DNA of 64,000 bases from IMGVR_UViG_3300022744_000022:144487-208486; one strand, 5' to 3'; numbered from the stretch's first letter, positions 1,036-56,510 are shown. A program made the numbers and translations. The notes: generated by a model from the letters alone, not told the origin.

Positions 1036-2219
1036 CCATCGCCACCAACATCAAGGCTGCCAAGTGCCCTGAGGACATCTTCGGTGGCCCTCCGGATGGC
1101 AGCACCGTTACGCCGGTCTACCGCCAGCTCATCCTCGTGATCCACCCTGATCACTTCGATGGAAAGCCCACAGAGCTGGCCACTGCCACGGAAGCATTCC
1201 GGCTCCTGGCTCAGCTCCGGGGTGAGGCCGAACGCAAGATCAAGGCGGGCAAGTACGGCCAGAAGAAGGTCAAGGCACCGCCACCCAAAGAGCCCTTCCG
1301 CCCCTCAGTGGTTGAGGCCAACGGCAAGCGCTACATCTTGACGGATCAGGTTGCCTCGGGGGACCTGTGCGACATCTTCCTGTGTACGATCTCCAACGGA
1401 TCTGCCGACCACAAAGCCATTTTTAAGATCGTCAAGAACGGGGCTGACAACGATCTCGTTGAAAACGAGATCAAGGTACTTGCGAAGCTCCACGCGCCTG
1501 GGGTCAAGTTCGACGAACGCTTTTTCCCGAAAACGAACGACTCGTTCGTCATCCGGGGACCCGGGTTTCAACGTCAAGTCAACGTCCTGTCGTGGTTTCC
1601 AGAGCACCGAGGACTTGACGAGGTGCTGAGAGTCTTCCCGGACGGCATCGACTACCGTGACATGGTGTGGATGTTCAAACGCATCCTGCACGGCGTAGGG
1701 TTCGCCCACGAGAACCAGATCGTACACGGGGCCCTGATCCCGCCTCACATCCTGATCCACCCGGTGGACCACGGGGCCAAAATCATCGATTGGTCGTATG
1801 CGGTGGACATTACGCCTAAAGTCAAGGCGGTCAAACCCAAGACTCACCGCAGCCTTTACGACCTCTTGGACGCGGACGACATCCTTACTCCAGACCCGCA
1901 CGTCAAGGCAATCAGCGCCGACTACAAGTTGTATTACCCGCCGGAGATCCTTAAGAAAGAGATCCCGACGCCCGCCAGCGACATTTACATGGCAGCCAAG
2001 TGTGCGGTAGCCTTGGTGGGTGGTGACTTGAAAACGAACGCAATGCCCAACGAGATCCCTGGAACTGTCCGGGCCTTCTTTGAGCGTTGCCTTCATGCGG
2101 TTCCGGCCAAGCGTCCGCAGAACATGTGGGACGCCCATGAGGAGCTGGACCGAATCTTGAAAGCAGCCGTGGGCAAACGAACTTACCGACCCTTCCCCAT
2201 GCCTGAGGTACGCCCGTGA
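1023..2219 (+). CDS. J-domain-like (HPD) + Ser/Thr protein-kinase-like fusion
   Basis: YRQLILVIHPDHF; kinase-fold elements FKIVK..NE, IVHGALIPPHILI, IIDWS, YYPPE, SDIYMAA; ATG 1023 overlaps the upstream gene end. Confidence 0.75.
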   Translation: MELLTIATNIKAAKCPEDIFGGPPDGSTVTPVYRQLILVIHPDHFDGKPTELATATEAFRLLAQLRGEAERKIKAGKYGQKKVKAPPPKEPFRPSVVEANGKRYILTDQVASGDLCDIFLCTISNGSADHKAIFKIVKNGADNDLVENEIKVLAKLHAPGVKFDERFFPKTNDSFVIRGPGFQRQVNVLSWFPEHRGLDEVLRVFPDGIDYRDMVWMFKRILHGVGFAHENQIVHGALIPPHILIHPVDHGAKIIDWSYAVDITPKVKAVKPKTHRSLYDLLDADDILTPDPHVKAISADYKLYYPPEILKKEIPTPASDIYMAAKCAVALVGGDLKTNAMPNEIPGTVRAFFERCLHAVPAKRPQNMWDAHEELDRILKAAVGKRTYRPFPMPEVRP

Positions 2220-3418
2220 TGATCCGTTATGAAGACCGCCTCGCACAGCTCCGAGAGCTGCCCGTACGGATCTACTGTGCGGCAGCCGGGGCAGGAGCTG
2301 GGATTCAACAGATCCTCTGGAACCCCGTCGGAGCATCGGCCTATCTGGCTGGGGCTGCCTTCCCGTACTCCAAGGAGTTGTCCACAGACTTCTTGGGTTT
2401 CCAGCCCCCGAGCTTTGTGTGCCTTGATGAAGCCATCGACCTCGCGATCTCGTCCTATCTCAAGGCCGACAACGGGGATCCGACCAAGCAGCCCATCGGC
2501 CTAGGTTTGACCGCTGCGGTCGCCACGGCAGTGCAGCACCGTGGGGATCACCGAGTTCACGCGGTCGTGATCACGAGGGATCGTGTGCTTGCCTCGGAGA
2601 TGACGCTCCCCAAAGAGGGTCCGCACGTTCGTAACCGAGACGGCAGCATCGCGGACACGCTCGGGATCGAATTGATTTTGGCGGCAGCCAACCTGATCCC
2701 CGAGCCCGTCCGAGAGGCATACTTGGAAGCCACCGACGGACAGTGCCTCAAAGACATCACGCAGAGGGCCCGCCAGCACTTCCTGAGCCGACCGCTGTTT
2801 ACCCGGTACGGTCAACGCCTTGAGGCACCTGCGGGGAACCTGACGCTGTTCCCGGGCAACTTCGACCCGCCTCACGAGGGGCACTTCGCCAACGCGGGCG
2901 AAGAAGTGACGTTCCAGATCACCGCGAGCCCGCCGCACAAGCCGGGTTTGAGCCTCACGGACATGTTGGGCCGCGTTCGCCACTTCCGGCACAAGCGGGA
3001 CGTGCTGTTCATGGAAGGCGGGGCACTCTACCTGGAGAAGGCCCGGAGGTTCCCTGGTTCGACTATCATCCTGGGGAGCGATGCCCTCGAACGGATGCTT
3101 GATCCCAAGTGGGGCGTGGAAGTGCTGCCGTTGCTGACCGAGTTCCGCGAGCTGGGGACCAGGTTCAGGGTTGCGACACGTGAGGGGGACGAGTTCGCAC
3201 GGCTCCCGATCCCAGGGACCTTCCGAGACATGTTCACTGAGCTGCCCAAAACCCCGTACGCGGGCTTGAGTTCGACGCAGATCAGAGAGGGCGTATTGGC
3301 CCCCACCTCTCACGCGCCCCCCGGCACGGGCCAAGTGTGTGGTGCCGCTAATGATTGCACCCGGTTCAAAGGACACACAGGGCAGCACGCCAATCTCTAC
3401 AACCAGCGTGTTTGGTAA
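2216..3418 (+). CDS. CinA-like N-terminal domain + HxGH cytidylyltransferase/NMNAT-like nucleotidyltransferase
   Basis: N-terminal GAS..L.....PYS; C-terminal LFPGNFDPPHEGH, IILGSD, LSSTQIR; overlaps kinase stop. Confidence 0.7.
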   Translation: MMIRYEDRLAQLRELPVRIYCAAAGAGAGIQQILWNPVGASAYLAGAAFPYSKELSTDFLGFQPPSFVCLDEAIDLAISSYLKADNGDPTKQPIGLGLTAAVATAVQHRGDHRVHAVVITRDRVLASEMTLPKEGPHVRNRDGSIADTLGIELILAAANLIPEPVREAYLEATDGQCLKDITQRARQHFLSRPLFTRYGQRLEAPAGNLTLFPGNFDPPHEGHFANAGEEVTFQITASPPHKPGLSLTDMLGRVRHFRHKRDVLFMEGGALYLEKARRFPGSTIILGSDALERMLDPKWGVEVLPLLTEFRELGTRFRVATREGDEFARLPIPGTFRDMFTELPKTPYAGLSSTQIREGVLAPTSHAPPGTGQVCGAANDCTRFKGHTGQHANLYNQRVW

Positions 3419-4045
3419 TCACAAGTCGTCTTCGTCCTCTAGAGCAGCCCACAAGCCGCCGCCGCTGCCCCGGAGTTGGTTCTGCATCACACGTTGAAGT
3501 GGTGTGACGGCTTTGAACATGGCCTCCCGTCCAGAGTCATCGGGGACGGTCAGCGTAAAGAGCATCACGGAGTGCGTTTCATCGAGTAGCGTCAGAAGCC
3601 GGGTGCCTTCTTTGGGGCCAGGATCGAAGATGAAGTGGAGCCGCCAAACCCCACCGCCCGCACCCTGCTGGTTCTGGAACCCAGTCACCACGTGGTAGGG
3701 CTCGTCCGAGAGGGGCTCTGCTTGATACTGCGTCCCAATGGCTCGCAACCGAACGGCGAGATCCGACGAGTTTGCCAGCCCGAGGTTCCGCTCTCTAGTT
3801 TCTTGTATCACCTGCTCGGGGGTCTTCTTCACGGGGACGTGCAGGATCGTCTCCATGTATTCGTGGACACCCTGCGTCACTTTCGCTTTTGGGGTGGCCG
3901 TGTAGCTGATCGTCCGATTCCGTGGGTGCTCTTGGTGTAGTAACCCATTAGCCTTGCCCTGGACCCCCATGGTCCGGATCACGATCACCGTCGGACATTC
4001 CTCAGGGTTCAACCGAATCGGCCTACGTGTGACATCGATGAGCAC
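3419..4045 (-). CDS. Hypothetical protein with C-terminal LWAALEDEDDL tag
   Basis: 208-aa ORF; GGTGTA 9 nt before GTG. Confidence 0.65.
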   Translation of the reverse strand: MLIDVTRRPIRLNPEECPTVIVIRTMGVQGKANGLLHQEHPRNRTISYTATPKAKVTQGVHEYMETILHVPVKKTPEQVIQETRERNLGLANSSDLAVRLRAIGTQYQAEPLSDEPYHVVTGFQNQQGAGGGVWRLHFIFDPGPKEGTRLLTLLDETHSVMLFTLTVPDDSGREAMFKAVTPLQRVMQNQLRGSGGGLWAALEDEDDL

Positions 4046-4069
4046 CCCCTGTACTACACCGAACGGACT

Positions 4070-5127: not shown

Positions 5128-5394
5128 GCGTTGAGCCGTGAAACCGTTCAGGTAGACTTTCGCCTGAGCCCCGCCAAGTGTCCCGATTTGAATGTACGCC
5201 TTGCAGCAAGGGACCGCGACGATCTCTGCTTCGCGCAAAATCCCGCGAGACGCCACATCGATCAAAACCTCTACGGGTTGAGTGAACCCCGAGGGCCATC
5301 GGATGTAGAGGCGATCCCCGGCCTTGAGTGTTACCCCATCGAGGCTGTCATGGTACCCATCGTCCTGTTGGACAGTCACGACCTTGCTCGCCAA
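5119..5394 (-). CDS. Hypothetical protein
   Basis: 91-aa ORF in minus-strand block. Confidence 0.5.
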   Translation of the reverse strand: MASKVVTVQQDDGYHDSLDGVTLKAGDRLYIRWPSGFTQPVEVLIDVASRGILREAEIVAVPCCKAYIQIGTLGGAQAKVYLNGFTAQRLR

Positions 5395-5396
5395 AA

Positions 5397-5768: not shown

Positions 5769-5858
5769 AGCCGGTCTTTCCCGGCGGTCAGGCACGGACT
5801 TGAGTCGTCGGTATGGCCGCTCGACTTACCAGACGCGACCGTGCCAGGGGCGTGCTGG

Positions 5859-7043
5859 TTACGCTTTGCCTCCGAACCGTGCTTTGGCTTGTTCTTCAAC
5901 TTGCGACTCCAACTCACGGGGATTCAGGGCTAACTCAGGGTTTTGCAGAAGCAGCGACCGGGCCATGGGTACAAGCGCTCCGCGATCTTGCCCCTTAAGC
6001 TGATACACCTCAAACAGACGCACCTGATCGATCTCCGGCTTCTTTAGCATCTCAAGAAAACGCTTCTCGAAGGCGGGATCATCTGCGTGGGACAACAGAA
6101 CTTCCCTGAGTCGCGCAAGCCCGTCCTGCGACAAGAATGACACAGGCGTGCGAACGGTCCACCCCAGATCCAGCAGGTCCAGTAGTAGGTGGATTTCTTG
6201 TTCGGGCAGCCCACGGCTGAGCGCTGTGGCGAACCCGGGTTCTTCCGCGAGCATTTCCTTGAGCACTTCTCCGAGCCCCAAGTCATGTAGCAGCTCTACT
6301 GAGCGGCGAGGCTGTGGCGACTCCAAGATGTCCTCGACAAGGATTTTGCGAACCGCATCCCAAGGCATCTGTTTAAGCTTGTGCGCGTTCTGCTGAATGC
6401 TCGTCCGCACATCGGGCGAGATTTTGAACCCGTACTTCGCCACGAACTTGACAGCACGAAGCATCCGGGTCGGGTCATCCGAGAACGTCTTGTCGGGGTC
6501 CACCGGCGTGGTGAGCAGGCGATCCTCAAGGTGCTGTCGGCCGTTGCCGAGAAGGTCCAGCACTTCGGCACGATCAGGTCCGTGCTCCAGGTCTAGAAGC
6601 CGCCAGAGTAGCGTGTTGAACGTGAACTCGCGACGCTGCAAGTCTTCTTGGATGGTCGCAGGTTCGACCATGTGCGGCTTGTAACCTTTGCCCGAGGGAT
6701 CGCCGTAGCTCTCTTTGCGAGCGTTGGCGATCTCCAGGACTTCACCCTTGAGATCATGCCCGTCAAGGACCCACGAGTCCGCGACGGTGAGGATCGCCAC
6801 CCCATATTGGTTAGTCGTCAAATTCGTGCGGGTCGGAATGATCCGTTGGAGCTGCTCCGCGAACCACGCAGAGTCCTTCCTACCCCCGAGAGCTACGGAA
6901 TCGACCACTACGTCCACGTCTTTAGGCGCAAGGCCCATCAAGTGGTTTCGTACTGCGCCACCGACGATGTAGACGTGTTCTCCAACGCCAAGGCGCTTGG
7001 TGGCCAAGGACAAGAAACGTAGGAGTGCCGTTATTTTTGTCAT
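5859..7043 (-). CDS. cca: Class II tRNA nucleotidyltransferase (CCA-adding/poly(A) polymerase family)
   Basis: YIVGGAVR..KDVDVV, EDLQRREFTFN, DDPTRMLRAVKF; no PAP-specific (L/I)VGRRF signature seen. Confidence 0.8.
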   Translation of the reverse strand: MTKITALLRFLSLATKRLGVGEHVYIVGGAVRNHLMGLAPKDVDVVVDSVALGGRKDSAWFAEQLQRIIPTRTNLTTNQYGVAILTVADSWVLDGHDLKGEVLEIANARKESYGDPSGKGYKPHMVEPATIQEDLQRREFTFNTLLWRLLDLEHGPDRAEVLDLLGNGRQHLEDRLLTTPVDPDKTFSDDPTRMLRAVKFVAKYGFKISPDVRTSIQQNAHKLKQMPWDAVRKILVEDILESPQPRRSVELLHDLGLGEVLKEMLAEEPGFATALSRGLPEQEIHLLLDLLDLGWTVRTPVSFLSQDGLARLREVLLSHADDPAFEKRFLEMLKKPEIDQVRLFEVYQLKGQDRGALVPMARSLLLQNPELALNPRELESQVEEQAKARFGGKA

Positions 7044-7071
7044 GCTAGCGCTTTACTGAAAAGGAAACGAC

Positions 7072-8114: not shown

Positions 8115-8543
8115 GTGGCCCGGACCAGACAACGATTCACGAGCAAGGTGACGGTTAGGACAACGCTGCCGTTAGGTCGTAGTGAAACGCTCGGTTCGGT
8201 GCAGAACAAGCAAATCCGGCGTCCCGATGCCCCCGGGTACATCACGGGGATGCTGGGTAAGTGGTTCCTCGTGTTGCATGAGGGGGAAACGACCCCCGCT
8301 ATCTACAACCCAGAGGAACTCAGGCTTGAGCCGCACGCCTACTGGCGGGTCACCCACACCCTGGCAGGACAGCCCTACTTCAAGGAATTCGGAACCTACC
8401 GCGAGGTCGAGAAGCATTTGAAAGCGCTGGGCAAGTTGGGCGGTGTAGCCCTTGGTATCGAAGGCCCTTTCTACTCCGCAAAGGAGTTGGAAGAGGGGCC
8501 TGTCCCCACCCGAAATCTTTTTGATCATTTGAACGACGCATGA
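8115..8543 (+). CDS. Hypothetical protein with C-terminal RNLFDHLNDA tag
   Basis: 142-aa ORF, GAGGTG SD, coupled to next gene. Confidence 0.6.
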   Translation: MARTRQRFTSKVTVRTTLPLGRSETLGSVQNKQIRRPDAPGYITGMLGKWFLVLHEGETTPAIYNPEELRLEPHAYWRVTHTLAGQPYFKEFGTYREVEKHLKALGKLGGVALGIEGPFYSAKELEEGPVPTRNLFDHLNDA

Positions 8544-26493: not shown

Positions 26494-26981
26494 CCACTGA
26501 CACCAAACCTCGGATCAACACCATCCACAATCTCGGGCCCATCGACCCCGTGGAGCCCGGACACACGTACGAGTTCCTGTTTGGCATGAGCACACGAGCC
26601 GGTCACGTACACGAGCGGGGCTCGCTCCTGCACGTCGAAGACCGCACCACCCGAACCCCGCATGGGGAGATCAGTGAATCCGGAAGCAACTGGGTGTGCC
26701 GAACCCAGCACGGCACGTCCGTGTGGGCTACTCTTGAGCAGTGCCTGTCCCGGGGCATGCTCAAACGCCTGAGGGACTACACGGTTTACTTCTGGAACGG
26801 GGAGCTGGGGGCAGACCCCAAGGACCGTCGGGGACGCCCTCTCGTACACAACACCGTCATGGGCTTCACAGCCGACGACCTCGAAAATCTGACGGGCCAC
26901 TACGACGTGATGATCACGACGAGCACTTGCCCGCCCGTCCTATACCTCAACAAGGTCGGTGGGAAATTCGGCCAGCGCTAG
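26490..26981 (+). CDS. Hypothetical protein
   Basis: 163-aa coupled ORF. Confidence 0.6.
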   Translation: MTTDTKPRINTIHNLGPIDPVEPGHTYEFLFGMSTRAGHVHERGSLLHVEDRTTRTPHGEISESGSNWVCRTQHGTSVWATLEQCLSRGMLKRLRDYTVYFWNGELGADPKDRRGRPLVHNTVMGFTADDLENLTGHYDVMITTSTCPPVLYLNKVGGKFGQR

Positions 26982-27460
26982 TCGTCTGCCAGATGATCCC
27001 AAAGGGTCACTGGCTTAGCAGCGGTCTCCGGCGTAGGGGTGTCTCGCCTGTAGAGACGACGCTGATACAGGGGTTGCAGATCAGGCTCAACCCGTTCCCC
27101 AAACCGGGTGAGCGCTTCGATCATCCCACGTGAGATCCTGGCATCCGAACGTATACGGATCCTGACCCTGGAGGGGTGGACTTCCACACCGTGAAATCCG
27201 ATCTCGGCGGCGAGCGCTTGGATCGTTTGAACGAGGTGCCGATCCAGATCCCGTTCACCGGCCACGTGATCCTCGACCTCAAGCCACCCTTCACGATCTC
27301 GGGAGCGTGCAGGGTTCACGATGAGCCGACGCAGGTAGCTTAGCGCCAAGACCGTGGAACGCCCTGTACGGCGGTAGTCCTCGGTCCCATCATGGAGCCA
27401 GTCCAAGGCTTCCAGAGCCCTGCGTTGAGGCGGCGTGAGCGAGAAGACGGGTGGGGGCAC
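26978..27460 (-). CDS. Hypothetical protein with C-terminal VTLWDHLADD tag
   Basis: GGTGTA 9 nt before GTG; RTGRST degenerate P-loop-like. Confidence 0.65.
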   Translation of the reverse strand: MPPPVFSLTPPQRRALEALDWLHDGTEDYRRTGRSTVLALSYLRRLIVNPARSRDREGWLEVEDHVAGERDLDRHLVQTIQALAAEIGFHGVEVHPSRVRIRIRSDARISRGMIEALTRFGERVEPDLQPLYQRRLYRRDTPTPETAAKPVTLWDHLADD

Positions 27461-38243: not shown

Positions 38244-38432
38244 CTAACCGTTCGTGAAGCGCTTCCAGAGTGTCTGGGGCTGTACGCCGACCGCTTCGGC
38301 GTCGTTTGGTCCTGGGGTTGGGATCAAACGCCCGTGCTCGATGGCGAGGTAGACCACCTTACCGCTGGGATCCAGGGTGCAGAGGCGATCTTCCTCATCG
38401 ACGTACAGGTTCAACACTCGTAGCTCGGGCAT
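38244..38432 (-). CDS. Small protein, paralog of 47777-48115
   Basis: [21 protein letters not shown]. Confidence 0.6.
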   Translation of the reverse strand: MPELRVLNLYVDEEDRLCTLDPSGKVVYLAIEHGRLIPTPGPNDAEAVGVQPQTLWKRFTNG

Positions 38433-39036: not shown

Positions 39037-39577
39037 TCTCCTGAAGCATCTTTATAAATAGTTCCCCCTGTTCCTGTGCATCGGACAGGGCGACATGGGT
39101 ATGGGGGTTCTTGGAAAACCAACGCTTGGGCATGTTCCGCTTAGTAGCCTTTCGGAAGTCGCTCTTGAGCATGCACATGGCGAACGTCTTGATGTCTAGG
39201 CCGGAGAACGAGAAGGGGCTCTCGCCCGCGAACCTGATCAAGTACCAGTACACGAACATGAAGTCGTACGTGGCGGGGTACCCGACGAACACAGGCTTGC
39301 CAGGAAGGCCCTTGAGCCACTCTAGGTAGCCCTTCATGGCATCCACGGGGGTCACAAGGCCTTGACGGCACGCTGCCCAAGCCTCGGGCTGCCCCGCCCA
39401 CCATTCGGCGGTTTTGGGGTCTGCGGAGGCCCCTGGTAGCGTTTCTAGATTCCGCGTGAAGGTGTCGAGCAACGTGCCCTCTGACGAGAAGGCAGCGGAT
39501 CCGAAGCTCAGCATCGAGTTGGGGCCGGGGATTGGGCCGTCGGATTTAATGTCTGTGGAGACGTAGATTTCTTGCAT
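39020..39577 (-). CDS. DEDDh 3'-5' exonuclease (RNase AS-like); ExoI Glu reads Lys
   Basis: [33 protein letters not shown]. Confidence 0.8.
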
Positions 39578-39586
39578 CCTGGCCGC

Positions 39587-39603
39587 TACACCAAGCCGGT
39601 GTA
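39587..39603. promoter_or_regulatory. Divergent pair of GGTGTA elements
   Basis: TACACC-aagcc-GGTGTA; starts 9 nt (39577) and 10 nt (39614) away. Confidence 0.65.
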
Positions 39604-39613
39604 CTCTGCCCGG

Positions 39614-40036
39614 GTGCTCATCAACCTACTCGGCCCGATCATCCTTGCACCGTACGCGGATCGGGATGAACTCAGCTTCTTGACCAAGGACACGCGCCCT
39701 AAGGGCCTCGTGACTGTGATCCACGACGGCCTTGTGTACAAACAGCAAGGGGGCGAGCGGCAGGTCTTGGTTGAGGCGTACTGGCAAGTCCAAGAAGGTG
39801 TGATCCGAACCGCAATCCCGCTCAACCAAGCCTGTGGGCATAAGTTCTACTGTGGACACGTCTGGACCTCAGAACACGGCGAGTTCAACGTCAACAACCG
39901 CATCGTCTCAGTGTGCCTCAATGACGACATCTTGATCGTTACCCCTACGGGCGGGCAACCGCTGATGCTTGACCTTGGGCTAAAGATGGAAATCACGCAG
40001 GAAAAGCGAACCCTCTGGGATCTCTTGGCTGACTAG
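39614..40036 (+). CDS. Hypothetical protein with C-terminal RTLWDLLAD tag
   Basis: GTG 39614. Confidence 0.65.
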
Positions 40037-40537: not shown

Positions 40538-41221
40538 ATGACGAACGCATTCTGGAAGGGTCTGGCCAAGGTCGGACTTGTTGAGATCAACGAAGACGCC
40601 CCCGCCGCCTCTCAAGGCGAGACGGCTGCACAGCATACGGCGGTCACGGCTCGCCCTGCGGCCACACCGGCGGCACCTCCTGTCGGCGACCCTGGGCTCG
40701 TGGCAACCCTAGACGAGTCATCCAGGGCACAGCTCGTGGCTTCGATGGAGGCATCGGGGGCACAGCTCGTAGAAGACCTGATGGACATGCTCGGGACGCT
40801 CCGGGAGAACATCACCGATGAAGCGGCGCTCTACAAGGCGGCGCTCAAGATCCTGATCAAGCAGGGCAACACAGTCCTGGCGATTCGTCAGGACTTCGAC
40901 AAGTGCATCGGGGCCCTCGAAACCACAAACCGCGAGTTTGCGGCTCAACTCAAGAGCCAACTTGACAAGCGGGTGGGTGGTAAGCTCAAGACCGCTCAAG
41001 ACTGCAAGGCTCAGATAGCTGCCAAGCAGCAACAGATCGAAGCACTTCAGAACGAAGTGGCCAACCTTGCGGCCCAAGCTCACGAAGCTGAGGGCAGTGT
41101 GGCCGATGAACAGGCCAAGCTCGATCTCGCTCAACAGCGGTTCACACACAACTACACAGCGATTCGCGGAGAAATTGAAGCCAACTGCGCGAAGGTCGCC
41201 CAGTACGGGGAGAAGCTATGA
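40538..41221 (+). CDS. Coiled-coil protein (operon gene 1)
   Basis: Long heptad-like C-terminal half; coupled to next gene. Confidence 0.75.
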   Translation: MTNAFWKGLAKVGLVEINEDAPAASQGETAAQHTAVTARPAATPAAPPVGDPGLVATLDESSRAQLVASMEASGAQLVEDLMDMLGTLRENITDEAALYKAALKILIKQGNTVLAIRQDFDKCIGALETTNREFAAQLKSQLDKRVGGKLKTAQDCKAQIAAKQQQIEALQNEVANLAAQAHEAEGSVADEQAKLDLAQQRFTHNYTAIRGEIEANCAKVAQYGEKL

Positions 41222-42282
41222 ACGAGATCACGACCAGTCAGCCAAAGAAGTGGTACGAGAAGCCGGAGAACGTCCTGGTCTACGGCGTGCTTGGGGGCGT
41301 GGCTGTCTACAGCATCAAGCACATCGAGTCGATCGTTGCCTCGATCGTCCACATCATCGAGATGGGGGTCTGGGGGCTCGCGTTGCTGCTGGTGGGTTCC
41401 GTGCTGGGCTTCATGCTCGTCAACGGCGACTTCCACCGTGCCGCATGGCTGCTGTACGAAAACGCCATGCGTAAGGTTACGGGCCTGATCGTTGAGCTGG
41501 ACCCTATTGGGTCCATGAAGTCCTTCCTCAAGAGCTTAGGCAAGTACCAACAACAGCTCAAGACGAGTTTGCAAGCCATGCGTGGGCAGGCTGAGAAGCT
41601 CACGGACAAGCTCTCTCGTTCGGATCAGGCACAAGAGCACAGCCTCAAGCTGATGTCGCAGGCTCAGTCCCGTTCAACCGAAAAGGGCATGGCCCTTGAG
41701 ATGCGCAAGCAAGGTCGGAAAGCCTCTCGCGCCGAAGATCTCTCGATCACGTACCAAGGCCTACTCAACAAGGTCCGCATGATGATCGCGGTCATGGAGA
41801 AGGTCGAGGAAGCCACGGACTTCATGGTCGTGGACATCGCGGAAACCATCGAGACGGAATCCGAAAAGCGGGAGACCATCAACGAAGCTTGGAAGGCTAT
41901 GAACGCCGCCAAGCGTATCCTTGCCAAGAACAAGCAGCGTGAGATCTACGACATGGCGTTGGAAGCGACGCAGCGTGACTACGCCTTCAAGGTCGGCGAG
42001 ATCAAACAGTTCATGCGGGACACCGAGAGCTTCATCAACACGATGGATCTCGAAAACGGTGTGGCAGACGCCGATGCCCTCAAGATGCTTGAGCGTTGGG
42101 AGCAACGTTCCCTTGCTCTGCTCGAAGGCGGCTCGGGTAAGACCAAGTACCGTGTGGCCCCCGTCACAGCGGGCAGCTCACGCATGCTCGTGTCCAGCAC
42201 CGGCGCTCAAGTGATCGATGCCGAGATAGTTGAAGGCGACCGGCCTTCGTTCGCCACTCTCTTCGACAAGCTCGACAAGTAG
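41218..42282 (+). CDS. Membrane-anchored PspA/IM30-like coiled-coil protein
   Basis: Two N-terminal hydrophobic helices, then ELDPIGSMK.. and a long coiled coil. Confidence 0.6.
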   Translation: MNEITTSQPKKWYEKPENVLVYGVLGGVAVYSIKHIESIVASIVHIIEMGVWGLALLLVGSVLGFMLVNGDFHRAAWLLYENAMRKVTGLIVELDPIGSMKSFLKSLGKYQQQLKTSLQAMRGQAEKLTDKLSRSDQAQEHSLKLMSQAQSRSTEKGMALEMRKQGRKASRAEDLSITYQGLLNKVRMMIAVMEKVEEATDFMVVDIAETIETESEKRETINEAWKAMNAAKRILAKNKQREIYDMALEATQRDYAFKVGEIKQFMRDTESFINTMDLENGVADADALKMLERWEQRSLALLEGGSGKTKYRVAPVTAGSSRMLVSSTGAQVIDAEIVEGDRPSFATLFDKLDK

Positions 42283-42306
42283 ACCTCAGGAAAGAAGGCT
42301 ATTGTT

Positions 42307-44142: not shown

Positions 44143-44151
44143 AATAGCCCC

Positions 44152-44931
44152 ATGACCAACGCCTTTCGACCCAACCGAAGCCTCACCGGACAAGCCTGGA
44201 CCATCCTCTTGGGTGTGGAGGCCGCTGCGTTCCTGCTTATCTGGACCTTCGGGGACGCCTACTCGATCCCGGGGCCCTACGAGGTGCTGCAAGCTCTCGG
44301 AAGGGCTATCCGGGACGACGGGCTGCTCTACGAGCTAGGGGTCAGCTTCCGGATCAACGTGGAGGCCTTGGCGATCTCCACGTTGATCTCGGTAGGGCTC
44401 GCATGGCTCTCTGTCCTGGCTGCCGTACGCCCCATCGTGGCCGTGCTGTCTAGGGCCAGGTTTCTCAGTCTCGCGGGATTCGTGACCGTGTTCACGTTTG
44501 CCTTTGGGGGCGGCCATGCCCTCAAGGTGTCGCTCCTGACCTTCGGTATCTCGGTCTTCTTTCTCACGTCGATGGCCTCGGTGATCGCTTCGATCCCCCG
44601 AGCCGACTGGGATCAGGCCCGGTCCCTGAGAATGTCGGACTGGCGGAGTGTCTGGGAGATCGCTGTGCTCGGGAAGGCCGACGAAACGTTCGAGATGTTC
44701 CGCCAGAACGCTGCGATCGGCTGGGTGATGCTCACCATGGTCGAGGGTTTGGTCCGCTCTGAGGGCGGCGTGGGTGGCATCCTGCTCAACTCCACCCGCT
44801 ACCGAAACTTCGCCGCCGTGTTCGCAGTGCAAATTGCCGTGGCTCTCTTGGGTGCCGGACAAGACCGCCTGATCGCGTACCTCAAGCACAAGGTGTGCCC
44901 TTACAGTGCCCTCACGTTGGAGCGTAACTAA
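44152..44931 (+). CDS. ABC transporter permease (SsuC/TauC-like)
   Basis: About 6 TM segments; IP....DQARSL.MS.W, E......GGVG. Confidence 0.85.
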   Translation: MTNAFRPNRSLTGQAWTILLGVEAAAFLLIWTFGDAYSIPGPYEVLQALGRAIRDDGLLYELGVSFRINVEALAISTLISVGLAWLSVLAAVRPIVAVLSRARFLSLAGFVTVFTFAFGGGHALKVSLLTFGISVFFLTSMASVIASIPRADWDQARSLRMSDWRSVWEIAVLGKADETFEMFRQNAAIGWVMLTMVEGLVRSEGGVGGILLNSTRYRNFAAVFAVQIAVALLGAGQDRLIAYLKHKVCPYSALTLERN

Positions 44932-44933
44932 TC

Positions 44934-45878
44934 ATGGGTTTCAACGATCTTGCCAACCAAGCTCTAGAGGGCGCTTCCGTACGAGCCCCCGAGACCCGGC
45001 ACTCTAAAGTGGGGCAATACTCTCTCGGGGAAGTGCTGGTACGAGTCACGGACGTGACGCTCAGCTTCCAGAACAAAGACAACCCGGATGAGCCTCCGAA
45101 AGTTGTGCTCAAGCCTACGAGCATCGAGGTTCGGAACATCAGCCGTCCGAGTCTTGAGCAGGGACAGGTTGTGGGGCTGCTCGGGCCCTCGGGCATCGGC
45201 AAGTCGCAATTCAGCCGCATCCTCGCGGGGCTCCAGAAGCCTACGAGTGGCCAAGTGCTGGTCAGTGACTTCGAGGCGGACAAGACAGGGGCTCAGCTTC
45301 GCCCTGTCGAAGCCGGGCACGTCGGGATGGTCGCTCAGGACTACCCGTTGTTTCGGTGGCGTACTGTGCTCGGGAACCTGATCGTCGCGTTGGAGCACAC
45401 CACGCTGTCCAAGAAGGACAAGATCGAGAGGGCTCAAGAGTACCTCAGGCTGTTTGACGTTCAAGAGCTGGCCCCCAAGTACCCGGCTCAGCTCTCGGGT
45501 GGGCAACGTCAACGGATCGCGATCATCCGGCAACTCTTGTGTGCCGAGCACTTCATCGTGATGGACGAGCCCTTCACGGGTCTAGACCCGATCTCGAAGG
45601 ACATCGTGTGCGAAGTGATCAACAAGGTCGCGACACTGCACGAGCACAACACCATCTTCGTGGTGGCTCACGACATCACCGCGTTGTGCCAAATTTCCGA
45701 TCAGCTCTGGCTCTTTGGCCGGGACCGTGACGAAGAAGGCAAGGTGATCCCCGGTGCTACGGTCAAGACCAAGTTCGACCTCATCGAGCGAGGGCTAGCG
45801 TGGCAGCCCGGCATCTACGAGACGCAGCCTTTCACGGATTTCGTGCGTGAGGTTCGTTCGGAATTCAGGCACCTCTAG
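44934..45878 (+). CDS. ABC transporter ATP-binding protein (SsuB/TauB-like)
   Basis: GPSGIGKS, Q-loop, LSGGQRQR, IVMDEPF, AHD. Confidence 0.95.
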   Translation: MGFNDLANQALEGASVRAPETRHSKVGQYSLGEVLVRVTDVTLSFQNKDNPDEPPKVVLKPTSIEVRNISRPSLEQGQVVGLLGPSGIGKSQFSRILAGLQKPTSGQVLVSDFEADKTGAQLRPVEAGHVGMVAQDYPLFRWRTVLGNLIVALEHTTLSKKDKIERAQEYLRLFDVQELAPKYPAQLSGGQRQRIAIIRQLLCAEHFIVMDEPFTGLDPISKDIVCEVINKVATLHEHNTIFVVAHDITALCQISDQLWLFGRDRDEEGKVIPGATVKTKFDLIERGLAWQPGIYETQPFTDFVREVRSEFRHL

Positions 45879-45887
45879 GAGTAAATT

Positions 45888-46898
45888 ATGCACACCTTCA
45901 CCGTTGGCACCGAGAAGATGGCCGAGTGGTTCCTTCAGTCGCTCACGGAGGGGCACCGCTACGGTCCTCAACCCTTCGTTAAAGCGCTGGAGGGGTCGAG
46001 TATCTTGAGTGAGCCGACGGGACCGCTCTTGGGCACGACGGCTCGCAATGCCTTCTACTGGGGGCTGACGACGGCGTTCAGCCAACACGTGCCGCTTCGG
46101 ATCTCTCCCGACGCGGTGTGGCTGACGATCTTGAACGGGCTTACGCAGCACATCGACGAGAACCCCGAGGGGCTCCGGCACCACTTCGTGGAGCATGCGG
46201 GTAAGGAAACCTTGCAGGTTTCGGTCGAAGGCTCGCGGTGGGCCGAGCAAGGCGTGCAGCTCATGTCGGCGGCGTTGAAAGAGCGCCTTGGCAAGCGTCA
46301 CGACCTGATCGTGTCGTCGTTTTCGACAACGGCGGACGTGGATCGTGTTGCCTCGGAGATCATGCTCATGGGGGCGATGAAGCACTACTTCGAGTATCGT
46401 ATGATGCTCTGCTGCGGCTTGACCAACGTGACGATCTTGGGCGAGCCCGCCGACTGGGAGAACATCAAAGTTCGGCTCGGGGCAATGAGCGAGTTCGATC
46501 TCAAGTGGTGGACCGATCACTTGATCCCGATCGTGGACCAATTCAAGTCCGCCTGTGAGGGCAACCCAGACGTGGACTTTTGGAAGCGTCTGTACGTTCG
46601 CGAAGGCTACGGCTCGGGCGGCCAGCATGGTTTCACGGGGTGGCTGACGGCGTTCTACCCGTACTTGCAGGCTGCTCGCGGGGCCCGCGAGCGCAACCCG
46701 AAGGTCAACTGGGCTGCGGCTGGCCGTGTGGATGCGGACGACCTTCCTTCAGGGCTGGCGTTTGCTCCAGTGACCGTCGTATACCCAGACGGCTCGGAGC
46801 ACCCTCACAAGTTCTACGGGGGCGTCGTGGGCTGTACGTTCGAGGAAGGGGCCATTCGGCCGATCTCAGGCTGGTCAGCGCAAGAGCAACCAGCGTAG
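45888..46898 (+). CDS. DUF4419-like protein
   Basis: AFSQHVPLRISPDAVWLTI, FSTT, LMGAMKHYFEY....CG...VT..G...DW. Confidence 0.8.
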   Translation: MHTFTVGTEKMAEWFLQSLTEGHRYGPQPFVKALEGSSILSEPTGPLLGTTARNAFYWGLTTAFSQHVPLRISPDAVWLTILNGLTQHIDENPEGLRHHFVEHAGKETLQVSVEGSRWAEQGVQLMSAALKERLGKRHDLIVSSFSTTADVDRVASEIMLMGAMKHYFEYRMMLCCGLTNVTILGEPADWENIKVRLGAMSEFDLKWWTDHLIPIVDQFKSACEGNPDVDFWKRLYVREGYGSGGQHGFTGWLTAFYPYLQAARGARERNPKVNWAAAGRVDADDLPSGLAFAPVTVVYPDGSEHPHKFYGGVVGCTFEEGAIRPISGWSAQEQPA

Positions 46899-47441: not shown

Positions 47442-47823
47442 TGGGCTTTTTCTGGTCCGCCTTGAACCCGCGAGTTTTGGCCCGGGTGATCCGCTTGATC
47501 CGCTTCTCGACCAGCTCTTGGATCACTTCCTCGCGAGCCTTTGTACAAGCCTGTACCAAGAGCGTGTCTTCGTAGAGCCGCAGCTTTCGCAACGCTTCCT
47601 CAGGCGTGTAGTCGGGGTAGACCTTCGTGGGCTCGTCCGTGTCGTGAAGCCAAACGCGACCCTCACGTGGGTTGCACATGACCACGAACATACCGCCAGA
47701 GCTGAGGCTCAGAATGCCGCGAGCCTTCGTGACGGAGTGCCCCGTCTCTGGGTAGCTCGCGTACTGCCCCAGCCGATCAATCCGCCGAGCCGTGTCCTGA
47801 ATCTTTTGCAGTAGAGTTGCCAC
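47434..47823 (-). CDS. Hypothetical protein
   Basis: GGTGTA 10 nt before GTG. Confidence 0.6.
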   Translation of the reverse strand: MATLLQKIQDTARRIDRLGQYASYPETGHSVTKARGILSLSSGGMFVVMCNPREGRVWLHDTDEPTKVYPDYTPEEALRKLRLYEDTLLVQACTKAREEVIQELVEKRIKRITRAKTRGFKADQKKPNA

Positions 47824-48115
47824 GCCCTACTGTTACACCGGGCTCATCTTCTTTCAAGTGATCCCAGAGCGTCCTGAGGCTACGAGCAGGGGGCTCCAGC
47901 AATTTGGACGGTTCGACCGGGGATTCTAACTTGTACTCAGGGGGCGAGATCAGTGCCCCCTGTACAGGCGGGGTGGTGGTCGCGACCAAGTACGTGATGG
48001 TACCCCGGGAGTCCATCAAGCAGAGGCGGCCCAGCTCATCTAGGAACATGGAAGCGTACCCCCTAGGCGGGGTCTGAACGCTACTCGTTGAGGCACGTCG
48101 GAAGCGTAGCGCCAT
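47777..48115 (-). CDS. Small protein with RTLWDHLKEDE tag; paralog of 38244-38432
   Basis: MFLDELGRLCLMDSRGTITYL; GGTGTA 10 nt before ATG. Confidence 0.65.
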   Translation of the reverse strand: MALRFRRASTSSVQTPPRGYASMFLDELGRLCLMDSRGTITYLVATTTPPVQGALISPPEYKLESPVEPSKLLEPPARSLRTLWDHLKEDEPGVTVGRGNSTAKDSGHGSAD

Positions 48116-51024: not shown

Positions 51025-51525
51025 TCAAGAGTCGTTCAATTTGTCCCACAGGGAAGTGGGCGGCGGTTCTTCCCGGGGCTCATCGAACATCGCCTCATCG
51101 CTCAACTGGACCAGCACCGGGGCGTTCCGCAGGGGGCACCAATCGGGAGTTCCGCTCTGAGGTACCGGCCGTTCCGCCAACCTGGTGCATCTCTGGATAG
51201 AGCAGAACGGGCAGCTCTGGCACCCGTCCACCGACTGGGATCCGACTTGCAGGGTCCTCAGGGACGGTTCTTCGGTGTCCCAGCACGCCATGCAGGCCGA
51301 ACGCATCCGCCCATCCGCAGAGATACTCGCGGAGAACCGTTCTCCACAGGACACGCAAGCGTGTGTCCACACGGGGGTGTCGTCTTCCTCAGGTGCCGCC
51401 ATGGGTTGAACGTAGTCTTCAAGGTGAAGCGGTTCCATCGCGTACACACGGCAGTCCGAGCACTCGCCCCTTCTCAGACGCAGCTCATCTTCGACTTCAA
51501 CACCGCAGCCGGTACAAGTGGGCAC
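51025..51525 (-). CDS. Cys-rich protein with C-terminal TSLWDKLNDS tag
   Basis: Multiple CxxC, PDWCPL; GGTGTA 9 nt before GTG. Confidence 0.65.
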   Translation of the reverse strand: MPTCTGCGVEVEDELRLRRGECSDCRVYAMEPLHLEDYVQPMAAPEEDDTPVWTHACVSCGERFSASISADGRMRSACMACWDTEEPSLRTLQVGSQSVDGCQSCPFCSIQRCTRLAERPVPQSGTPDWCPLRNAPVLVQLSDEAMFDEPREEPPPTSLWDKLNDS

Positions 51526-55384: not shown

Positions 55385-55386
55385 CC

Positions 55387-55629
55387 CTACCCTCTAGGTC
55401 GGGCCAAGAAACCGTGATAGCCACGTCCCTTGGCCTTTTTGATCGAACACACCCTGCACTTCTCGGGCGTCTGGTGGACCCAACGTGACAACGGGATCTC
55501 CACGGTTCGCCCGCACCCACAAAGAAGCCTTACCATCCGTTGCCGGTAAGGCCTCTCGTCACGCATGACCATGACCGAGAACTCTTCCACGAGAGTCAAG
55601 GTCCCTGAGCTTTGCCGTATCTCAGTCAC
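55387..55629 (-). CDS. Small Zn-ribbon protein
   Basis: CGCG...CRVC. Confidence 0.5.
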   Translation of the reverse strand: MTEIRQSSGTLTLVEEFSVMVMRDERPYRQRMVRLLCGCGRTVEIPLSRWVHQTPEKCRVCSIKKAKGRGYHGFLARPRG

Positions 55630-56081
55630 TAGACCAACCCGTACCCTTTGGCCCAGTTACGGACCGCAACATCCGAGACGCCGAACTGAGCCCCGAGCTG
55701 AACCCACGTTACCCGCCCAACCAGCGGGGCCAGTTCCTCACGTGGGGGCTTGACGCCCTTCTTGGTCAACCTAGGGAGCTTCAAGGCCGCAAGTTTCGCT
55801 TTTCGTGCCTGGTTGTACTCTCTGGCACACACGCGACAGGTCCTCGCCAGGTACCTCCCGTACGGCGTATGGTGCTTGTATCGCCGCTCGTTCTGCTTCG
55901 TGAGCGGGTGTCCCTTGCTGCACACCCGCTTCTGCGGGGCCACCAGTTTGTAGTCAGTCACGGTGTCGCACCTGACACAGAAGCGGCTCAGAGTGGTAGC
56001 CCCCACACATCTCACAGAAGTCAGGTTGCTTCCGAGCCCACTCCAACCACTCGGGAGTGTAGGGCGGATCCGGCTCAACAT
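55629..56081 (-). CDS. Zn-finger + HTH protein
   Basis: CSKGH...RTCRVC; WVQLGAQFGVSDVAVRNW. Confidence 0.6.
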   Translation of the reverse strand: MLSRIRPTLPSGWSGLGSNLTSVRCVGATTLSRFCVRCDTVTDYKLVAPQKRVCSKGHPLTKQNERRYKHHTPYGRYLARTCRVCAREYNQARKAKLAALKLPRLTKKGVKPPREELAPLVGRVTWVQLGAQFGVSDVAVRNWAKGYGLV

Positions 56082-56117
56082 CCTCGGTGGGATCAGGATT
56101 CGAGGGTAACTCAGGCA

Positions 56118-56510
56118 TCAATCATCCCCGCCCAACAAGCCCCAAAGTAAATCAGGGGTCTTGGGGTAGTGCAAGAACGGTTCCGGTAGCAAATCACCGT
56201 GACGGTTCTTAAGGTACCCCATCATGACACCTTGACCCATCACGAAGCCCGTGGTGATCAAGTCGGCCATCTTCGCCGCATCATCGGGAACGTCCCGAAC
56301 ATGAAAATGTCCAGCGTTGCGTTGAGCACTCCTGAGCACCGAACCACTGGCCCGGATCTCCAGCAGCACCACGATCTTTTCCTCAAGGGCCCGATGCTTG
56401 GCCGCCCACGCATCCCCTTTCATGACCACGAGGTTTGCAGGGAACAGCTCTAGGGGCCGTTGCCCCAGGTGGACCCAAAGATCCCCTGGTTTTAGCTCGA
56501 AATGGAACAC
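56118..56510 (-). CDS. Hypothetical protein with C-terminal LLWGLLGGDD tag
   Basis: GGTGTA 9 nt before GTG 56510. Confidence 0.6.
   Translation of the reverse strand: MFHFELKPGDLWVHLGQRPLELFPANLVVMKGDAWAAKHRALEEKIVVLLEIRASGSVLRSAQRNAGHFHVRDVPDDAAKMADLITTGFVMGQGVMMGYLKNRHGDLLPEPFLHYPKTPDLLWGLLGGDD

What the first reader, a model, noticed from the sequence alone, without database searches (positions are those of the whole stretch)
1848..56155. A shared peptide tag (L-[WFY]-D-x-L-x-D/E) at the C-terminus of many unrelated proteins
Seen: RNLFDHLNDA* (ends 8543), VTLWDHLADD* (26978), RTLWDLLAD* (40036), TSLWDKLNDS* (51025), RTLWDHLKEDE (about 47845-47880, near the end), ATLFDKLDK* (42282). Looser matches: GLWAALEDEDDL* (3419), LLWGLLGGDD* (56118), QTLWKRF (38244). 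Most follow a Pro-rich or flexible linker. Apart from one paralog pair, the proteins share nothing else. The DNA differs at synonymous sites (ctt/ctc/ctg, gat/gac), so conservation is at protein level. Inference: a phage-wide short linear motif that docks diverse cargo on one hub. Candidate hubs are a sliding clamp (compare T4 gp45-binding SLDFL and archaeal PIP QxTLxxF), RNA polymerase, a protease adaptor, or a capsid/compartment import factor. I know of no description of this tag.
Basis: partly seen in the sequence, partly recalled or inferred. Interest (0 to 1): 0.9.

Follow-up and report, generated by a model that had tools for sequence, protein, structure and literature searches.

The report
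Shared C-terminal address tag in huge phages
Many unrelated proteins of this roughly 290-kb phage and its 200-420-kb relatives end in the same short peptide (T-L-W-D-H-L-K/R-D/E), an undescribed docking tag whose most likely reader is the phages' own specialised ClpX unfoldase.

Summary
In the window, L[WFY]D.L falls within 3 residues of a stop five times (0.22 expected). All five lie in good coding ORFs that share nothing else. The window is part of a 291-kb phage contig. In its 398-kb and 416-kb relatives, about half or more of the genes in arrays of small genes end in [TSN]-L-W-D-H-L-[KR]-[DE]. Synonymous sites vary freely. Orthologues keep the tag while their linkers diverge. One family (67 clusters) has a hypervariable Pro-rich linker and a near-invariant W..L tail. 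The same DNA pattern in 185,000 bacterial genomes is almost never C-terminal. The reader protein is not proven. The tag resembles the T4/RB69 clamp-binding tails, and the phage RNase HII carries a similar tail. However, 171 kb of the genome holds a PolA/DnaB/DnaG replisome without the tag and no clamp or loader. All five contigs of tag-bearing phages tested encode a distinct ClpX clade (69-98% identical; other viral ClpX at most 46%). This clade keeps the zinc-finger N-domain, the GYVG pore loop and the ClpP-docking loop, but its RKH loop is replaced. Best reading: a tether or degradation tag for phage ClpX (about 0.35). No paper describes it.

The parts
8115..8543 (+). Tagged ORF, 142 aa, no known domain. 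The tag N-L-F-D-H-L-N-D-A is at 8514-8540, after a Pro-containing linker.
   Evidence: No Pfam or PHROG hit. The likely orthologue in the 416-kb phage ends DLFAHLDDDIV*.
26978..27460 (-). Tagged ORF, 160 aa. It has an N-domain of about 125 aa, a Pro/Thr-rich linker and the tag T-L-W-D-H-L-A-D-D at 26981-27007.
   Evidence: There are 67 homologue clusters, most with a Pro-rich linker and a W-[DE]-x-L tail. In the AF2 model the domain is confident, the linker is of low confidence and the tail is a short helix at residues 153-157. No PDB fold match.
39572..40036 (+). Tagged ORF, 154 aa. The tag T-L-W-D-L-L-A-D is at 40010-40033.
   Evidence: Homologues P0002-P0005, 65-81% identical, all end RTLWDLL.(E)D*.
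41218..42282 (+). Tagged ORF, 354 aa, with an N-terminal transmembrane segment and a long coiled coil. The tag T-L-F-D-K-L-D-K is at 42256-42279. It lies upstream of a 611-aa OmpA-domain protein.
51025..51525 (-). Tagged ORF, 166 aa, Cys-rich with several CxxC pairs. It has an acidic/Pro linker, and the tag S-L-W-D-K-L-N-D-S is at 51028-51054.
   Evidence: Called as a 166-aa gene on the ENA and JGI contigs.
47777..48115 (-). ORF with T-L-W-D-H-L-K-E-D-E at 47843-47872, followed here by 25 more residues that overlap the next gene. It is a paralogue of 38244-38432.
   Evidence: The orthologue in the 416/173-kb phage ends TLWDHLRDDEGKDGQ*.
3419..3988 (-). ORF, 189 aa, with the degenerate tag G-L-W-A-A-L-E-D-E-D-D-L at 3422-3457.
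   Evidence: The orthologue in the 416-kb phage ends GLWGAVLDDDF*. TLWAAL and TLWGAI variants occur in the relatives' arrays.
56118..56510 (-). ORF, 130 aa, with a possible degenerate tag L-L-W-G-L-L-G-G-D-D at 56121-56150.
   Evidence: It resembles the LWG.L variants of relatives. No orthologue was checked.
38244..38432 (-). ORF, 62 aa, paralogue of 47777-48115, with the decayed tail Q-T-L-W-K-R-F-T-N-G at 38247-38276.
1023..2219 (+). Ser/Thr-kinase-like protein, 398 aa, with an internal copy of the motif (S-L-Y-D-L-L-D-A-D-D, 1851-1880) in a loop insertion of about 25 residues.
   Evidence: Pfam and PHROG kinase hits. The insertion and motif are kept as TLYDYLTDD in the 416-kb phage. The insertion is missing from the distant kinase homologues L018, L019, L020 and L022.

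Best explanation
The feature is a genuine short linear peptide tag selected at protein level. Its consensus is [T/S/N]-L-[W>F>Y]-[D>E]-[H]-[L/I/V]-[K/R]-[D/E], followed by 0-10 further, often acidic, residues and the stop codon. It usually follows a flexible Pro- or charge-rich linker. It is predicted to form one amphipathic helical turn that puts L, W and L on one face.

A clade of huge phages (about 116 to 416 kb and more) has appended it to dozens of otherwise unrelated proteins. These include small Cys-rich proteins, membrane proteins and a few enzymes. One copy sits in a kinase loop.

Inferred mechanism: the tag tethers its carriers to one common reader. The best candidate is the clade's own ClpX-type AAA+ unfoldase. 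This ClpX keeps the N-terminal zinc-finger adaptor-binding domain, the GYVG pore loop and the ClpP-docking [I/L/M]GF loop. It has replaced the RKH loop that canonical ClpX uses to read ssrA tags. Docking would work like the C-terminal XB tail of SspB on its long linker. It would deliver tagged proteins for unfolding, and with ClpP for degradation, giving the phage programmed turnover or remodelling of its accessory proteome.

Shown: the tag exists, it is selected at protein level, its distribution is as described, and it co-occurs with the ClpX clade.

Inferred: that the tag binds anything, that the binder is ClpX, and that the outcome is degradation.
For: The tag is real.
- In the window, 5 C-terminal strict hits against 0.22 expected.
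- There are 46 distinct instances in the window plus about 45 kb of relatives. Synonymous positions are free: GAC 23 / GAT 18, CAC 21 / CAT 18, six Leu codons.
- A logo from 69 instances gives T/N/S, L, W, D, H, L, K/R, D/E.
- In the arrays, 14-15 of 24 (L012) and 14-16 of 29 (L006) non-overlapping same-strand ORFs are tagged.
- The 56 tagged proteins fall into 39 BLAST clusters once the tail is removed.

Orthologues keep the tag.
- RTLWDLL.D in five homologues of 39572-40036.
- SLLDRLLDE / TVFDLLREE / NLYDHLLEDE / NLYDHLMGDE in four phages.
- GLWAAL / GLWGAV.
- In the 26978 family, W154 and L157 are near-invariant behind a hypervariable linker. The AF2 model shows a short tail helix after a low-confidence linker.

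The tag is virus-specific.
- The TLWDHLxD DNA pattern is C-terminal in 8 of 12 hits in viral contigs, all in huge-phage contigs.
- It is C-terminal in 7 of 80 hits in 185,579 bacterial and archaeal genomes, and those are short spurious ORFs.

The ClpX candidate.
- It is a 424-aa phage ClpX with zf-C4_ClpX, AAA_2 and D2-small domains.
- GYVG and LGF are kept and RKH is replaced. The replacement holds across the clade.
- It is 69-71% identical in the 398-, 416- and 203-kb phages and 98% in the 116-kb phage. Every other viral ClpX is at most 46% identical. Cultured phages reach at most 48%.

An internal copy in a kinase loop, specific to tag-bearing phages, fits a docking site that needs no free C-terminus.

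From established knowledge: ClpX is the textbook reader of short terminal tags on unrelated proteins, and its N-domain binds adaptor tails.
Against: - No binding evidence of any kind exists.
- The motif resembles none of the known ClpX signals (ssrA ...LAA, MuA ...RRKKAI, SspB XB ...LRVVK; these are quoted from memory).
- ClpX is part of a large syntenic core shared by these related phages, so co-occurrence with the tag may only reflect common descent.
- Other conserved candidates sit nearby: a Ycf46-like AAA ATPase and two J-domain proteins.
- No phage ClpP was seen.
- Only 171 of 291 kb of this genome was inspected.
- Acidic residues after the motif are unlike classic pore-engaged degrons.
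Confidence: 0.35

Rival explanations
1. Sliding-clamp docking tail. The tag would be a PIP-box/gp45-type clamp-binding motif that tethers many proteins to a ring-shaped DNA clamp, either phage-encoded or the host's.
For: - There is a close resemblance to experimentally established clamp tails, which I read from the genome records. RB69 gp43 ends ...KKASLFDMFDF* and gp55 ends ...SPSLDFLYEDDN*. T4 gp43 ends ...KASLDFLFG* and gp55 ends ...SPSLDFLYEAND*. Compare NLFDHLNDA*, TLFDKLDK* and TLFDHLAKEDEPT* here.
- From memory, the Pyrococcus RFC-L PIP peptide is KQATLFDFLKK.
- RNase HII is a classic PCNA client in archaea and eukaryotes. In this phage it has a 24-residue C-terminal extension ending QDLFALFEAIDS*. 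Most of its 120 closest homologues, many on 260-512-kb contigs, carry tails of the same two flavours, including QRAWEHLEDES* and VNVWDLLGNETE*.
Against: - The replication module is PolA (1004 aa), DnaB with an intein, a DnaG-like primase and SNF2. None of them ends in the tag.
- No clamp or clamp-loader family appears in 171 kb screened with Pfam or PHROGs.
- The invariant Q of PIP and beta-clamp motifs is absent.
- Clients include membrane proteins, a radical SAM enzyme and dozens of tiny Cys-rich proteins.
- The RNase HII of the 398-kb phage ends DIMELLDSLE*, not the canonical LWDHL used by that phage's other tags.
Confidence: 0.17
2. Docking on another, so far unrecognised hub. Candidates are the conserved Ycf46-like AAA ATPase, host DnaK via the phage J-domain proteins, host RNA polymerase or ribosome, or a virion or compartment targeting receptor that loads the tagged proteins into the capsid for injection.
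For: - The SLiM properties are solid, but nothing ties them to a particular reader.
- A 514-aa classic-clade AAA protein is 70-72% conserved in the same four phages, 7 kb from ClpX.
- Two J-domain proteins are present.
- From established knowledge, C-terminal targeting peptides after linkers are how encapsulins load cargo and how the HK97 protease is encapsidated.
- Arrays of small genes look like early or accessory genes that could be anti-defence cargo.
Against: - Several clients have transmembrane helices, which is awkward for capsid or proteinaceous-compartment cargo.
- The tagged genes are not clustered with the virion genes found at 51-60 kb.
- No chimallin-like or encapsulin-like feature was seen, but neither was specifically searched for.
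- By established knowledge, DnaK disfavours acidic peptides.
Confidence: 0.3
3. No partner at all. The tail would be an intramolecular or protective element, for example a C-terminal cap that stabilises proteins or shields them from host tail-specific proteolysis. Alternatively it is a by-product of recombination that spreads a 3' gene cassette.
For: - The tail helix has fairly high confidence (about 80) in the AF2 model of one family.
- Tandem arrays with paralogue families exist, for example an 11-member cluster in L012, so some spread by duplication is certain.
Against: - The same tail cannot pack against 39 unrelated folds.
- The linker is hypervariable in length while W and L are near-invariant.
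- DNA is not conserved at synonymous sites, which excludes a recently spread DNA cassette.
- An internal loop copy exists in the kinase.
Confidence: 0.08

Closest known systems
T4/RB69 gp45 sliding-clamp-binding tails and archaeal C-terminal PIP boxes
   Same: - Extreme C-terminal position behind a linker.
- Core [S/T]-L-aromatic-D-x-hydrophobic, followed by acidic residues.
- Shared by functionally unrelated proteins of one virus.
- RB69 gp43 SLFDMFDF* matches NLFDHLNDA* position for position.
- RNase HII is among the carriers of a similar tail.
   Different: - No clamp or loader was found in 171 kb.
- The polymerase is family A and untagged.
- There is no conserved Q.
- W and H are strongly preferred here.
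- There are dozens of clients, including membrane proteins, against a handful in T4.
ClpX recognition signals: the ssrA tag, MuA-type C-terminal degrons and the SspB XB tether
   Same: - Short terminal peptides that mark unrelated proteins for one AAA+ machine.
- The SspB architecture (folded domain, long flexible linker, C-terminal docking peptide for the ClpX zinc-finger domain) mirrors the 26978 family.
- A dedicated ClpX is encoded by every tag-bearing phage contig tested.
   Different: - There is no sequence likeness to LAA, RRKKAI or LRVVK.
- 1-12 variable residues follow the motif, and one copy is internal.
- The tag is encoded in the gene rather than added co-translationally.
- Binding is untested.
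Encapsulin cargo-loading peptides and phage capsid-targeting sequences (T4 CTS, HK97 protease tail)
   Same: - A common short peptide on a linker addresses diverse proteins to one destination within a virus-like system.
   Different: - The consensus is unrelated to these signals.
- Some clients are membrane proteins.
- There is no link to capsid genes.
- The T4 CTS is N-terminal and is cleaved.
Chemoreceptor C-terminal pentapeptide NWETF, the CheR/CheB tether
   Same: - The pattern x-W-[E/D]-x-[F/L] sits at the very C-terminus of a long flexible linker and acts purely as a tether (from established knowledge). It resembles the AWERL and LWDHL flavours.
   Different: - It occurs on one protein family only.
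- Its readers are chemotaxis enzymes, and nothing here suggests chemotaxis.
- It is an analogy of principle, not a candidate family.

Membership tests
gp45/PCNA-type clamp-binding tail | C-terminal peptide on a flexible linker with a hydrophobic/aromatic core that resembles validated tails | tested here: met
   The logo T-L-W/F-D-H-L-K/R-D/E compares well with the RB69 and T4 tails read from GenBank.
gp45/PCNA-type clamp-binding tail | The genome encodes a sliding clamp and a clamp loader | tested here: inconclusive
   None was found in 171 of 291 kb, including the replication module. About 120 kb was not inspected.
gp45/PCNA-type clamp-binding tail | The replicative DNA polymerase carries the tail | tested here: not met
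   The polymerase is PolA, 1004 aa, and ends ...AKLRKHNLLCAE*. DnaB, the primase and SNF2 are also untagged.
gp45/PCNA-type clamp-binding tail | The peptide binds the hydrophobic groove of the clamp | not testable with these tools
   No complex prediction or binding assay was available.
Canonical PIP box or bacterial beta-clamp motif | A conserved Gln at position 1 (QxxLxxFF, or QL[SD]LF) | tested here: not met
   Positions -4 to -2 are P, K, S or R, with no Q preference. Only some RNase HII tails have Q-D-L-F.
ClpX degradation or tethering tag | A cognate ClpX is available | tested here: met
   The phage-encoded ClpX clade is present in all five tag-bearing contigs tested.
ClpX degradation or tethering tag | Sequence matches a known ClpX signal class (C-motif 1 LAA, C-motif 2 basic, XB LRVVK) | tested here: not met
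   The tag is aromatic and acidic. The known classes are quoted from memory.
ClpX degradation or tethering tag | The signal must lie at the free C-terminus (pore-engaged degron) | tested here: not met
   1-12 variable residues follow the core, and an internal loop copy exists. This is compatible only with an N-domain tether.
ClpX degradation or tethering tag | Tag-dependent binding, unfolding or degradation by ClpX(P) | not testable with these tools
   This needs biochemistry or complex modelling.
Encapsulin or capsid cargo-loading peptide | Consensus of known targeting peptides, with clients that are soluble cargo linked to shell genes | tested here: not met
   The consensus differs, some clients have TM helices, and there is no linkage to the virion genes.

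The most novel reading that the evidence does not exclude
A lineage of huge phages runs its own proteome-addressing system. A genetically encoded C-terminal tag sits on a large share of its accessory genes, more than half of the genes in some arrays. A dedicated, re-specified phage ClpX reads the tag. The virus could then time the removal or remodelling of whole cohorts of its own proteins independently of host proteolysis signals. The tag could also be reused as a portable degron or tether.
Probability: 0.3. Interest if true: 0.9.

Novelty: new variant of a known kind. Interest (0 to 1): 0.85.

Why it matters
Short linear motifs that wire many proteins to one hub are well known in eukaryotes and their viruses. 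In phages they are limited to a few cases, such as the T4 clamp tails.

Here one motif marks dozens of otherwise unannotatable ORFan proteins in some of the largest known phage genomes. This gives three things:
- a handle for sorting "dark matter" genes into a functional cohort;
- a directly testable peptide-reader pair, with a concrete candidate in the phage ClpX that has an altered specificity loop;
- if confirmed, a compact orthogonal tag for targeted tethering or degradation in bacteria.

It would also show that huge phages bring their own proteostasis logic rather than only borrowing the host's.

Tried and rejected
- **DNA-level repeat or regulatory site translated by accident.** Rejected, because third codon positions and Leu codon families vary freely.
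- **Simple paralogy.** Rejected as the main cause. There are 39 clusters among 56 tagged proteins after removing the tail, although paralogue families exist in the arrays.
- **A host motif copied by the phage.** The genome scan found the same eight residues mainly as an internal TPR-like helix (gdaTLWDHLGDv) of a roughly 770-aa Planctomycetota protein, not as a C-terminal tag. This also means the scan gives no host assignment.
- **Domain annotation of tagged proteins.** Pfam and PHROGs found nothing useful. The AF2 model of the 26978 family has no PDB fold match. The ESM Atlas gives only a weak lead to terminase-like P-loop N-termini.
- **Cultured relatives.** No megablast hit. One virion protein is 38-40% identical to Mesorhizobium and Erythrobacter phages. 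There is no tblastn hit for the 26978 family, and no ClpX above 48%.
- **Metagenome scan for TLWDHLxD.** It returned mostly the same few phages plus chance hits.
- **A repeated 14-mer to fetch many loci at once.** None exists in 137 kb.
- **The 226-aa conserved gene just downstream of ClpX as a possible ClpP or adaptor.** No PDB sequence hit, a weak AF2 model (pLDDT 70) and no fold match.
- **The 227-aa protein at 40538-41221 as a gp45-sized clamp candidate.** It is an acidic coiled-coil protein, not a clamp.
- **Literature.** No paper contains LWDHL as a motif, and none describes a phage-encoded ClpX tag system.

Full report
**What the window is.** The 64-kb window (GC 0.60, no tRNA) is the last 64 kb of IMG/VR contig UViG_3300022744_000022 (208,486 bp). 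It lies inside a 291,219-bp ENA contig of the same phage. It carries typical jumbo-phage accessory genes:
- a PurA/PurZ-like synthetase;
- a kinase;
- RtcB, an RNA ligase, a CCA-adding enzyme and PTH2;
- NADAR and an HU-like protein;
- a sigma region 4 protein;
- a GH64 tail-spike-like protein and virion proteins.

**Checking the observation.**
- The strict pattern L[WFY]D.L occurs nine times in the six-frame translation, against 1.5 expected.
- Five of these end within three residues of a stop, against 0.22 expected (maximum 2 in 200 Markov shuffles).
- All five lie in ORFs with good coding statistics, or in ORFs called as genes on the public contigs.
- BLASTP among the tagged proteins finds only the tails, plus one paralogue pair.
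- The codons differ at synonymous sites.

I then joined overlapping fetched loci and read 171 kb of the same genome, of which 137 kb was joined and screened statistically. This added TLFDHLAKEDEPT*, TLFDHLLMADDE*, TLWALLDGEPQEGS*, TYWDLLSQDDDERLP* and SLLDRLLDEGDDE*. C-terminal hits exceed the internal rate (11 against 2.4, p = 4e-5). About 15 of about 235 genes carry a tag. A permissive regex has a background of about 2.6% in unrelated viral loci, so single loose matches need support from an orthologue.

**The phenomenon is much larger in relatives.** I scanned 2.9 million viral contigs for the DNA encoding T-L-W-D-H-L-x-D. There were 12 hits. Eight are C-terminal, and all eight lie in huge-phage contigs of 173, 208, 398 and 416 kb.

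Around those hits, arrays of small same-strand genes (50-220 aa) almost all end in the tag. Counts are 14-15 of 24 ORFs in an 11.8-kb stretch of the 398-kb phage, and 14-16 of 29 in a 10.4-kb stretch of the 173/416-kb phage.
- Across 46 distinct instances the synonymous positions are free: GAC 23 / GAT 18, CAC 21 / CAT 18, six Leu codons.
- A logo from 69 instances reads T/N/S, L, W>F>Y, D>E, H, L/V/I, K/R, D/E, with 1-12 residues after the five-residue core.
- After the tail is removed, 56 tagged proteins fall into 39 BLAST clusters.
- About half are Cys-rich with CxxC pairs, and a few have transmembrane helices.
- Degenerate versions (TLWAAL, TLWGAI, FWDHL, LWGHL) occur in the same arrays.

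**Evolutionary behaviour of the tag.** It behaves like a short linear motif.
- Homologues of 39572-40036 that are 65-81% identical all end RTLWDLL.D.
- One orthologue set in four phages reads SLLDRLLDE / TVFDLLREE / NLYDHLLEDE / NLYDHLMGDE.
- The orthologue of 3419 ends GLWGAVLDDDF.
- The orthologue of 47777 ends TLWDHLRDDEGKDGQ*.
- An exhaustive phmmer search with the 26978 protein found 67 clusters. They share a conserved N-domain of about 125 residues, a Pro-rich linker of very variable length, and a tail in which W and L are at least 90% conserved (TLWDHL, SLWERL, TAWERL and others).
- AlphaFold gives a confident domain, a low-confidence linker and a one-turn helix at the tag.
- The kinase carries the motif inside a loop insertion of about 25 residues. 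The 416-kb phage keeps this insertion as TLYDYLTDD, and more distant kinase homologues lack it.

By contrast, the same DNA pattern in 185,579 bacterial and archaeal genomes is C-terminal in only 7 of 80 hits, all in short spurious ORFs. The Planctomycetota-rich hits are an internal TPR-like helix of one conserved protein. The tag is therefore a virus-specific, protein-level feature.

**What reads it? The clamp idea.** The tag looks like the clamp-binding tails of T-even phages. I read these from GenBank:
- RB69 gp43 ...KKASLFDMFDF* and gp55 ...SPSLDFLYEDDN*;
- T4 gp43 ...KASLDFLFG* and gp55 ...SPSLDFLYEAND*.

In addition, the phage RNase HII has a 24-residue C-terminal extension ending QDLFALFEAIDS*. 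The 55%-identical orthologue in a close relative lacks this extension. Most of the 120 nearest RNase HII homologues, many on 260-512-kb contigs, carry a tail. The tails are of a D-[ILV]-[FM]-x-[LM]-[LIF]-E type or a [RQ]-[EA]-[AL]-W-[ED]-x-L-acidic type.

Gene content argues against the clamp.
- The replication module is SNF2, an intein-containing DnaB, a DnaG-like primase and a 1004-aa family A polymerase. None of them is tagged.
- No clamp or clamp loader appears in the 171 kb screened.
- Clients include membrane proteins and a radical SAM enzyme.

**What reads it? The ClpX candidate.** About 58 kb upstream of the window the phage encodes a full-length ClpX.
- It keeps the C4 zinc-finger N-domain, the Walker motifs, the GYVG pore loop and an LGF ClpP-docking loop.
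- Its RKH loop is replaced. The replacement, PRG.G.R[AS]VSG, is shared by the whole clade.
- Orthologues are 69-71% identical in the 398-, 416- and 203-kb phages and 98% identical in a 116-kb contig. Every other viral ClpX found is at most 46% identical, and cultured phages reach at most 48%.
- Twelve contig lengths recur in both the ClpX-clade hit list and the RNase HII hit list. I read these as the same contigs.

From established knowledge, ClpX is the archetypal reader of short terminal tags on unrelated proteins. Its N-domain binds the C-terminal peptide of the adaptor SspB, which sits at the end of a long flexible linker. That is the same architecture seen here.

I therefore rank "tether or degradation tag for the phage ClpX" first, at about 0.35.

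The weaknesses are plain:
- There are no binding data.
- The tag does not resemble known ClpX signals.
- The co-occurrence could reflect shared ancestry alone.
- Other conserved candidates exist, namely a Ycf46-like AAA ATPase and two J-domain proteins.

**Comparison with known systems and novelty.** The tag works like a PIP box or gp45 tail, an ssrA or XB signal, or a cargo-loading peptide. It fails at least one defining test for each of these families (see the membership table). Full-text searches found no description of the motif or of a phage ClpX tag system. One comparative study only notes that some jumbo phages encode ClpX, ClpA, ClpP or ClpS (PMC7824862). I class the feature as a new variant of a known kind, a shared docking or degron peptide. 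The reader protein is still to be proven.

Noticed in passing
window 37-1035 (+); the full gene starts 293 nt upstream of the window, at L016:8685-10013: An adenylosuccinate-synthetase homologue whose best PHROG is the PurZ family. Elsewhere in the genome are a family A DNA polymerase, ThyX, NT5C, a dNMP kinase and a nucleoside deoxyribosyltransferase. The phage may therefore make modified DNA, possibly 2-aminoadenine.
   Followed up: partly
window 5859-7043 (-), 23971-24618 (+), 30170-31588 (+), plus PTH2 genes (one at L114:1230-1643): An RNA repair and tRNA maintenance set: a CCA-adding enzyme, an RNA ligase, RtcB and peptidyl-tRNA hydrolase. This suggests a counter-measure to host anticodon nucleases.
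   Followed up: no
L016:3736-6358 (just upstream of the window) and window 2219-3418: An NAD salvage cluster: a NUDIX/NrtR-like protein, NAMPT and cytidylyltransferase-like (NMNAT-type) proteins. It resembles the phage NAD-reconstitution pathways used against NAD-depleting defences.
   Followed up: no
L182:3957-5231 (IMG/VR contig about 86.3-87.6 kb, 58 kb upstream of the window): A phage-encoded ClpX clade in which the RKH specificity loop is replaced by PRG.G.R[AS]VSG. The zinc finger, the GYVG loop and the IGF-type loop are kept.
   Followed up: yes
L219:1723-4494: A DnaB-type replicative helicase interrupted by an intein with a LAGLIDADG homing-endonuclease domain.
   Followed up: no
L120:16201-19314 (-), and the syntenic genes in L126 and L127: A polyvalent protein of about 1000 aa with an LPD1 domain and a eukaryotic-type topoisomerase IB catalytic core. 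It is conserved next to RNase HII and a Dam methylase in several huge phages.
   Followed up: no
window 26978-27460 (-): The conserved N-domain of this family has a Q...W...RRTGRST(V/L)LA motif. It looks like the adenine-binding Q motif plus the Walker A of terminase-type ATPases, with Lys replaced by Arg. The ESM Atlas gave weak leads to terminase N-termini.
   Followed up: partly
window 56646-57848 (-): A GH64 beta-1,3-glucanase domain protein that PHROGs annotates as a tail spike. It hints that the host carries a beta-1,3-glucan (curdlan-like) surface polymer.
   Followed up: no
Genome-contig loci L033-L100 (for example L036, Schlesneria sp. T3-172 chromosome): A protein of about 770 aa, conserved in Planctomycetaceae, contains the internal helix ...gdaTLWDHLGDv..., which looks like a TPR repeat. 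This accounts for most bacterial hits to the tag's DNA pattern and is unrelated to the C-terminal tag.
   Followed up: partly
L220:1570-2667 (-) and L220:6404-7531 (+): Two J-domain (HPD motif) proteins are encoded next to the replication module. Together with ClpX and a Ycf46-like AAA ATPase they make an unusually rich proteostasis gene set for a phage.
   Followed up: no
window 41218-46898 (+): A same-strand run of genes: the tagged TM/coiled-coil protein, a 611-aa OmpA-domain protein, a polytopic membrane protein, an ABC-type ATPase and DUF4419. It may be an envelope-associated module.
   Followed up: no
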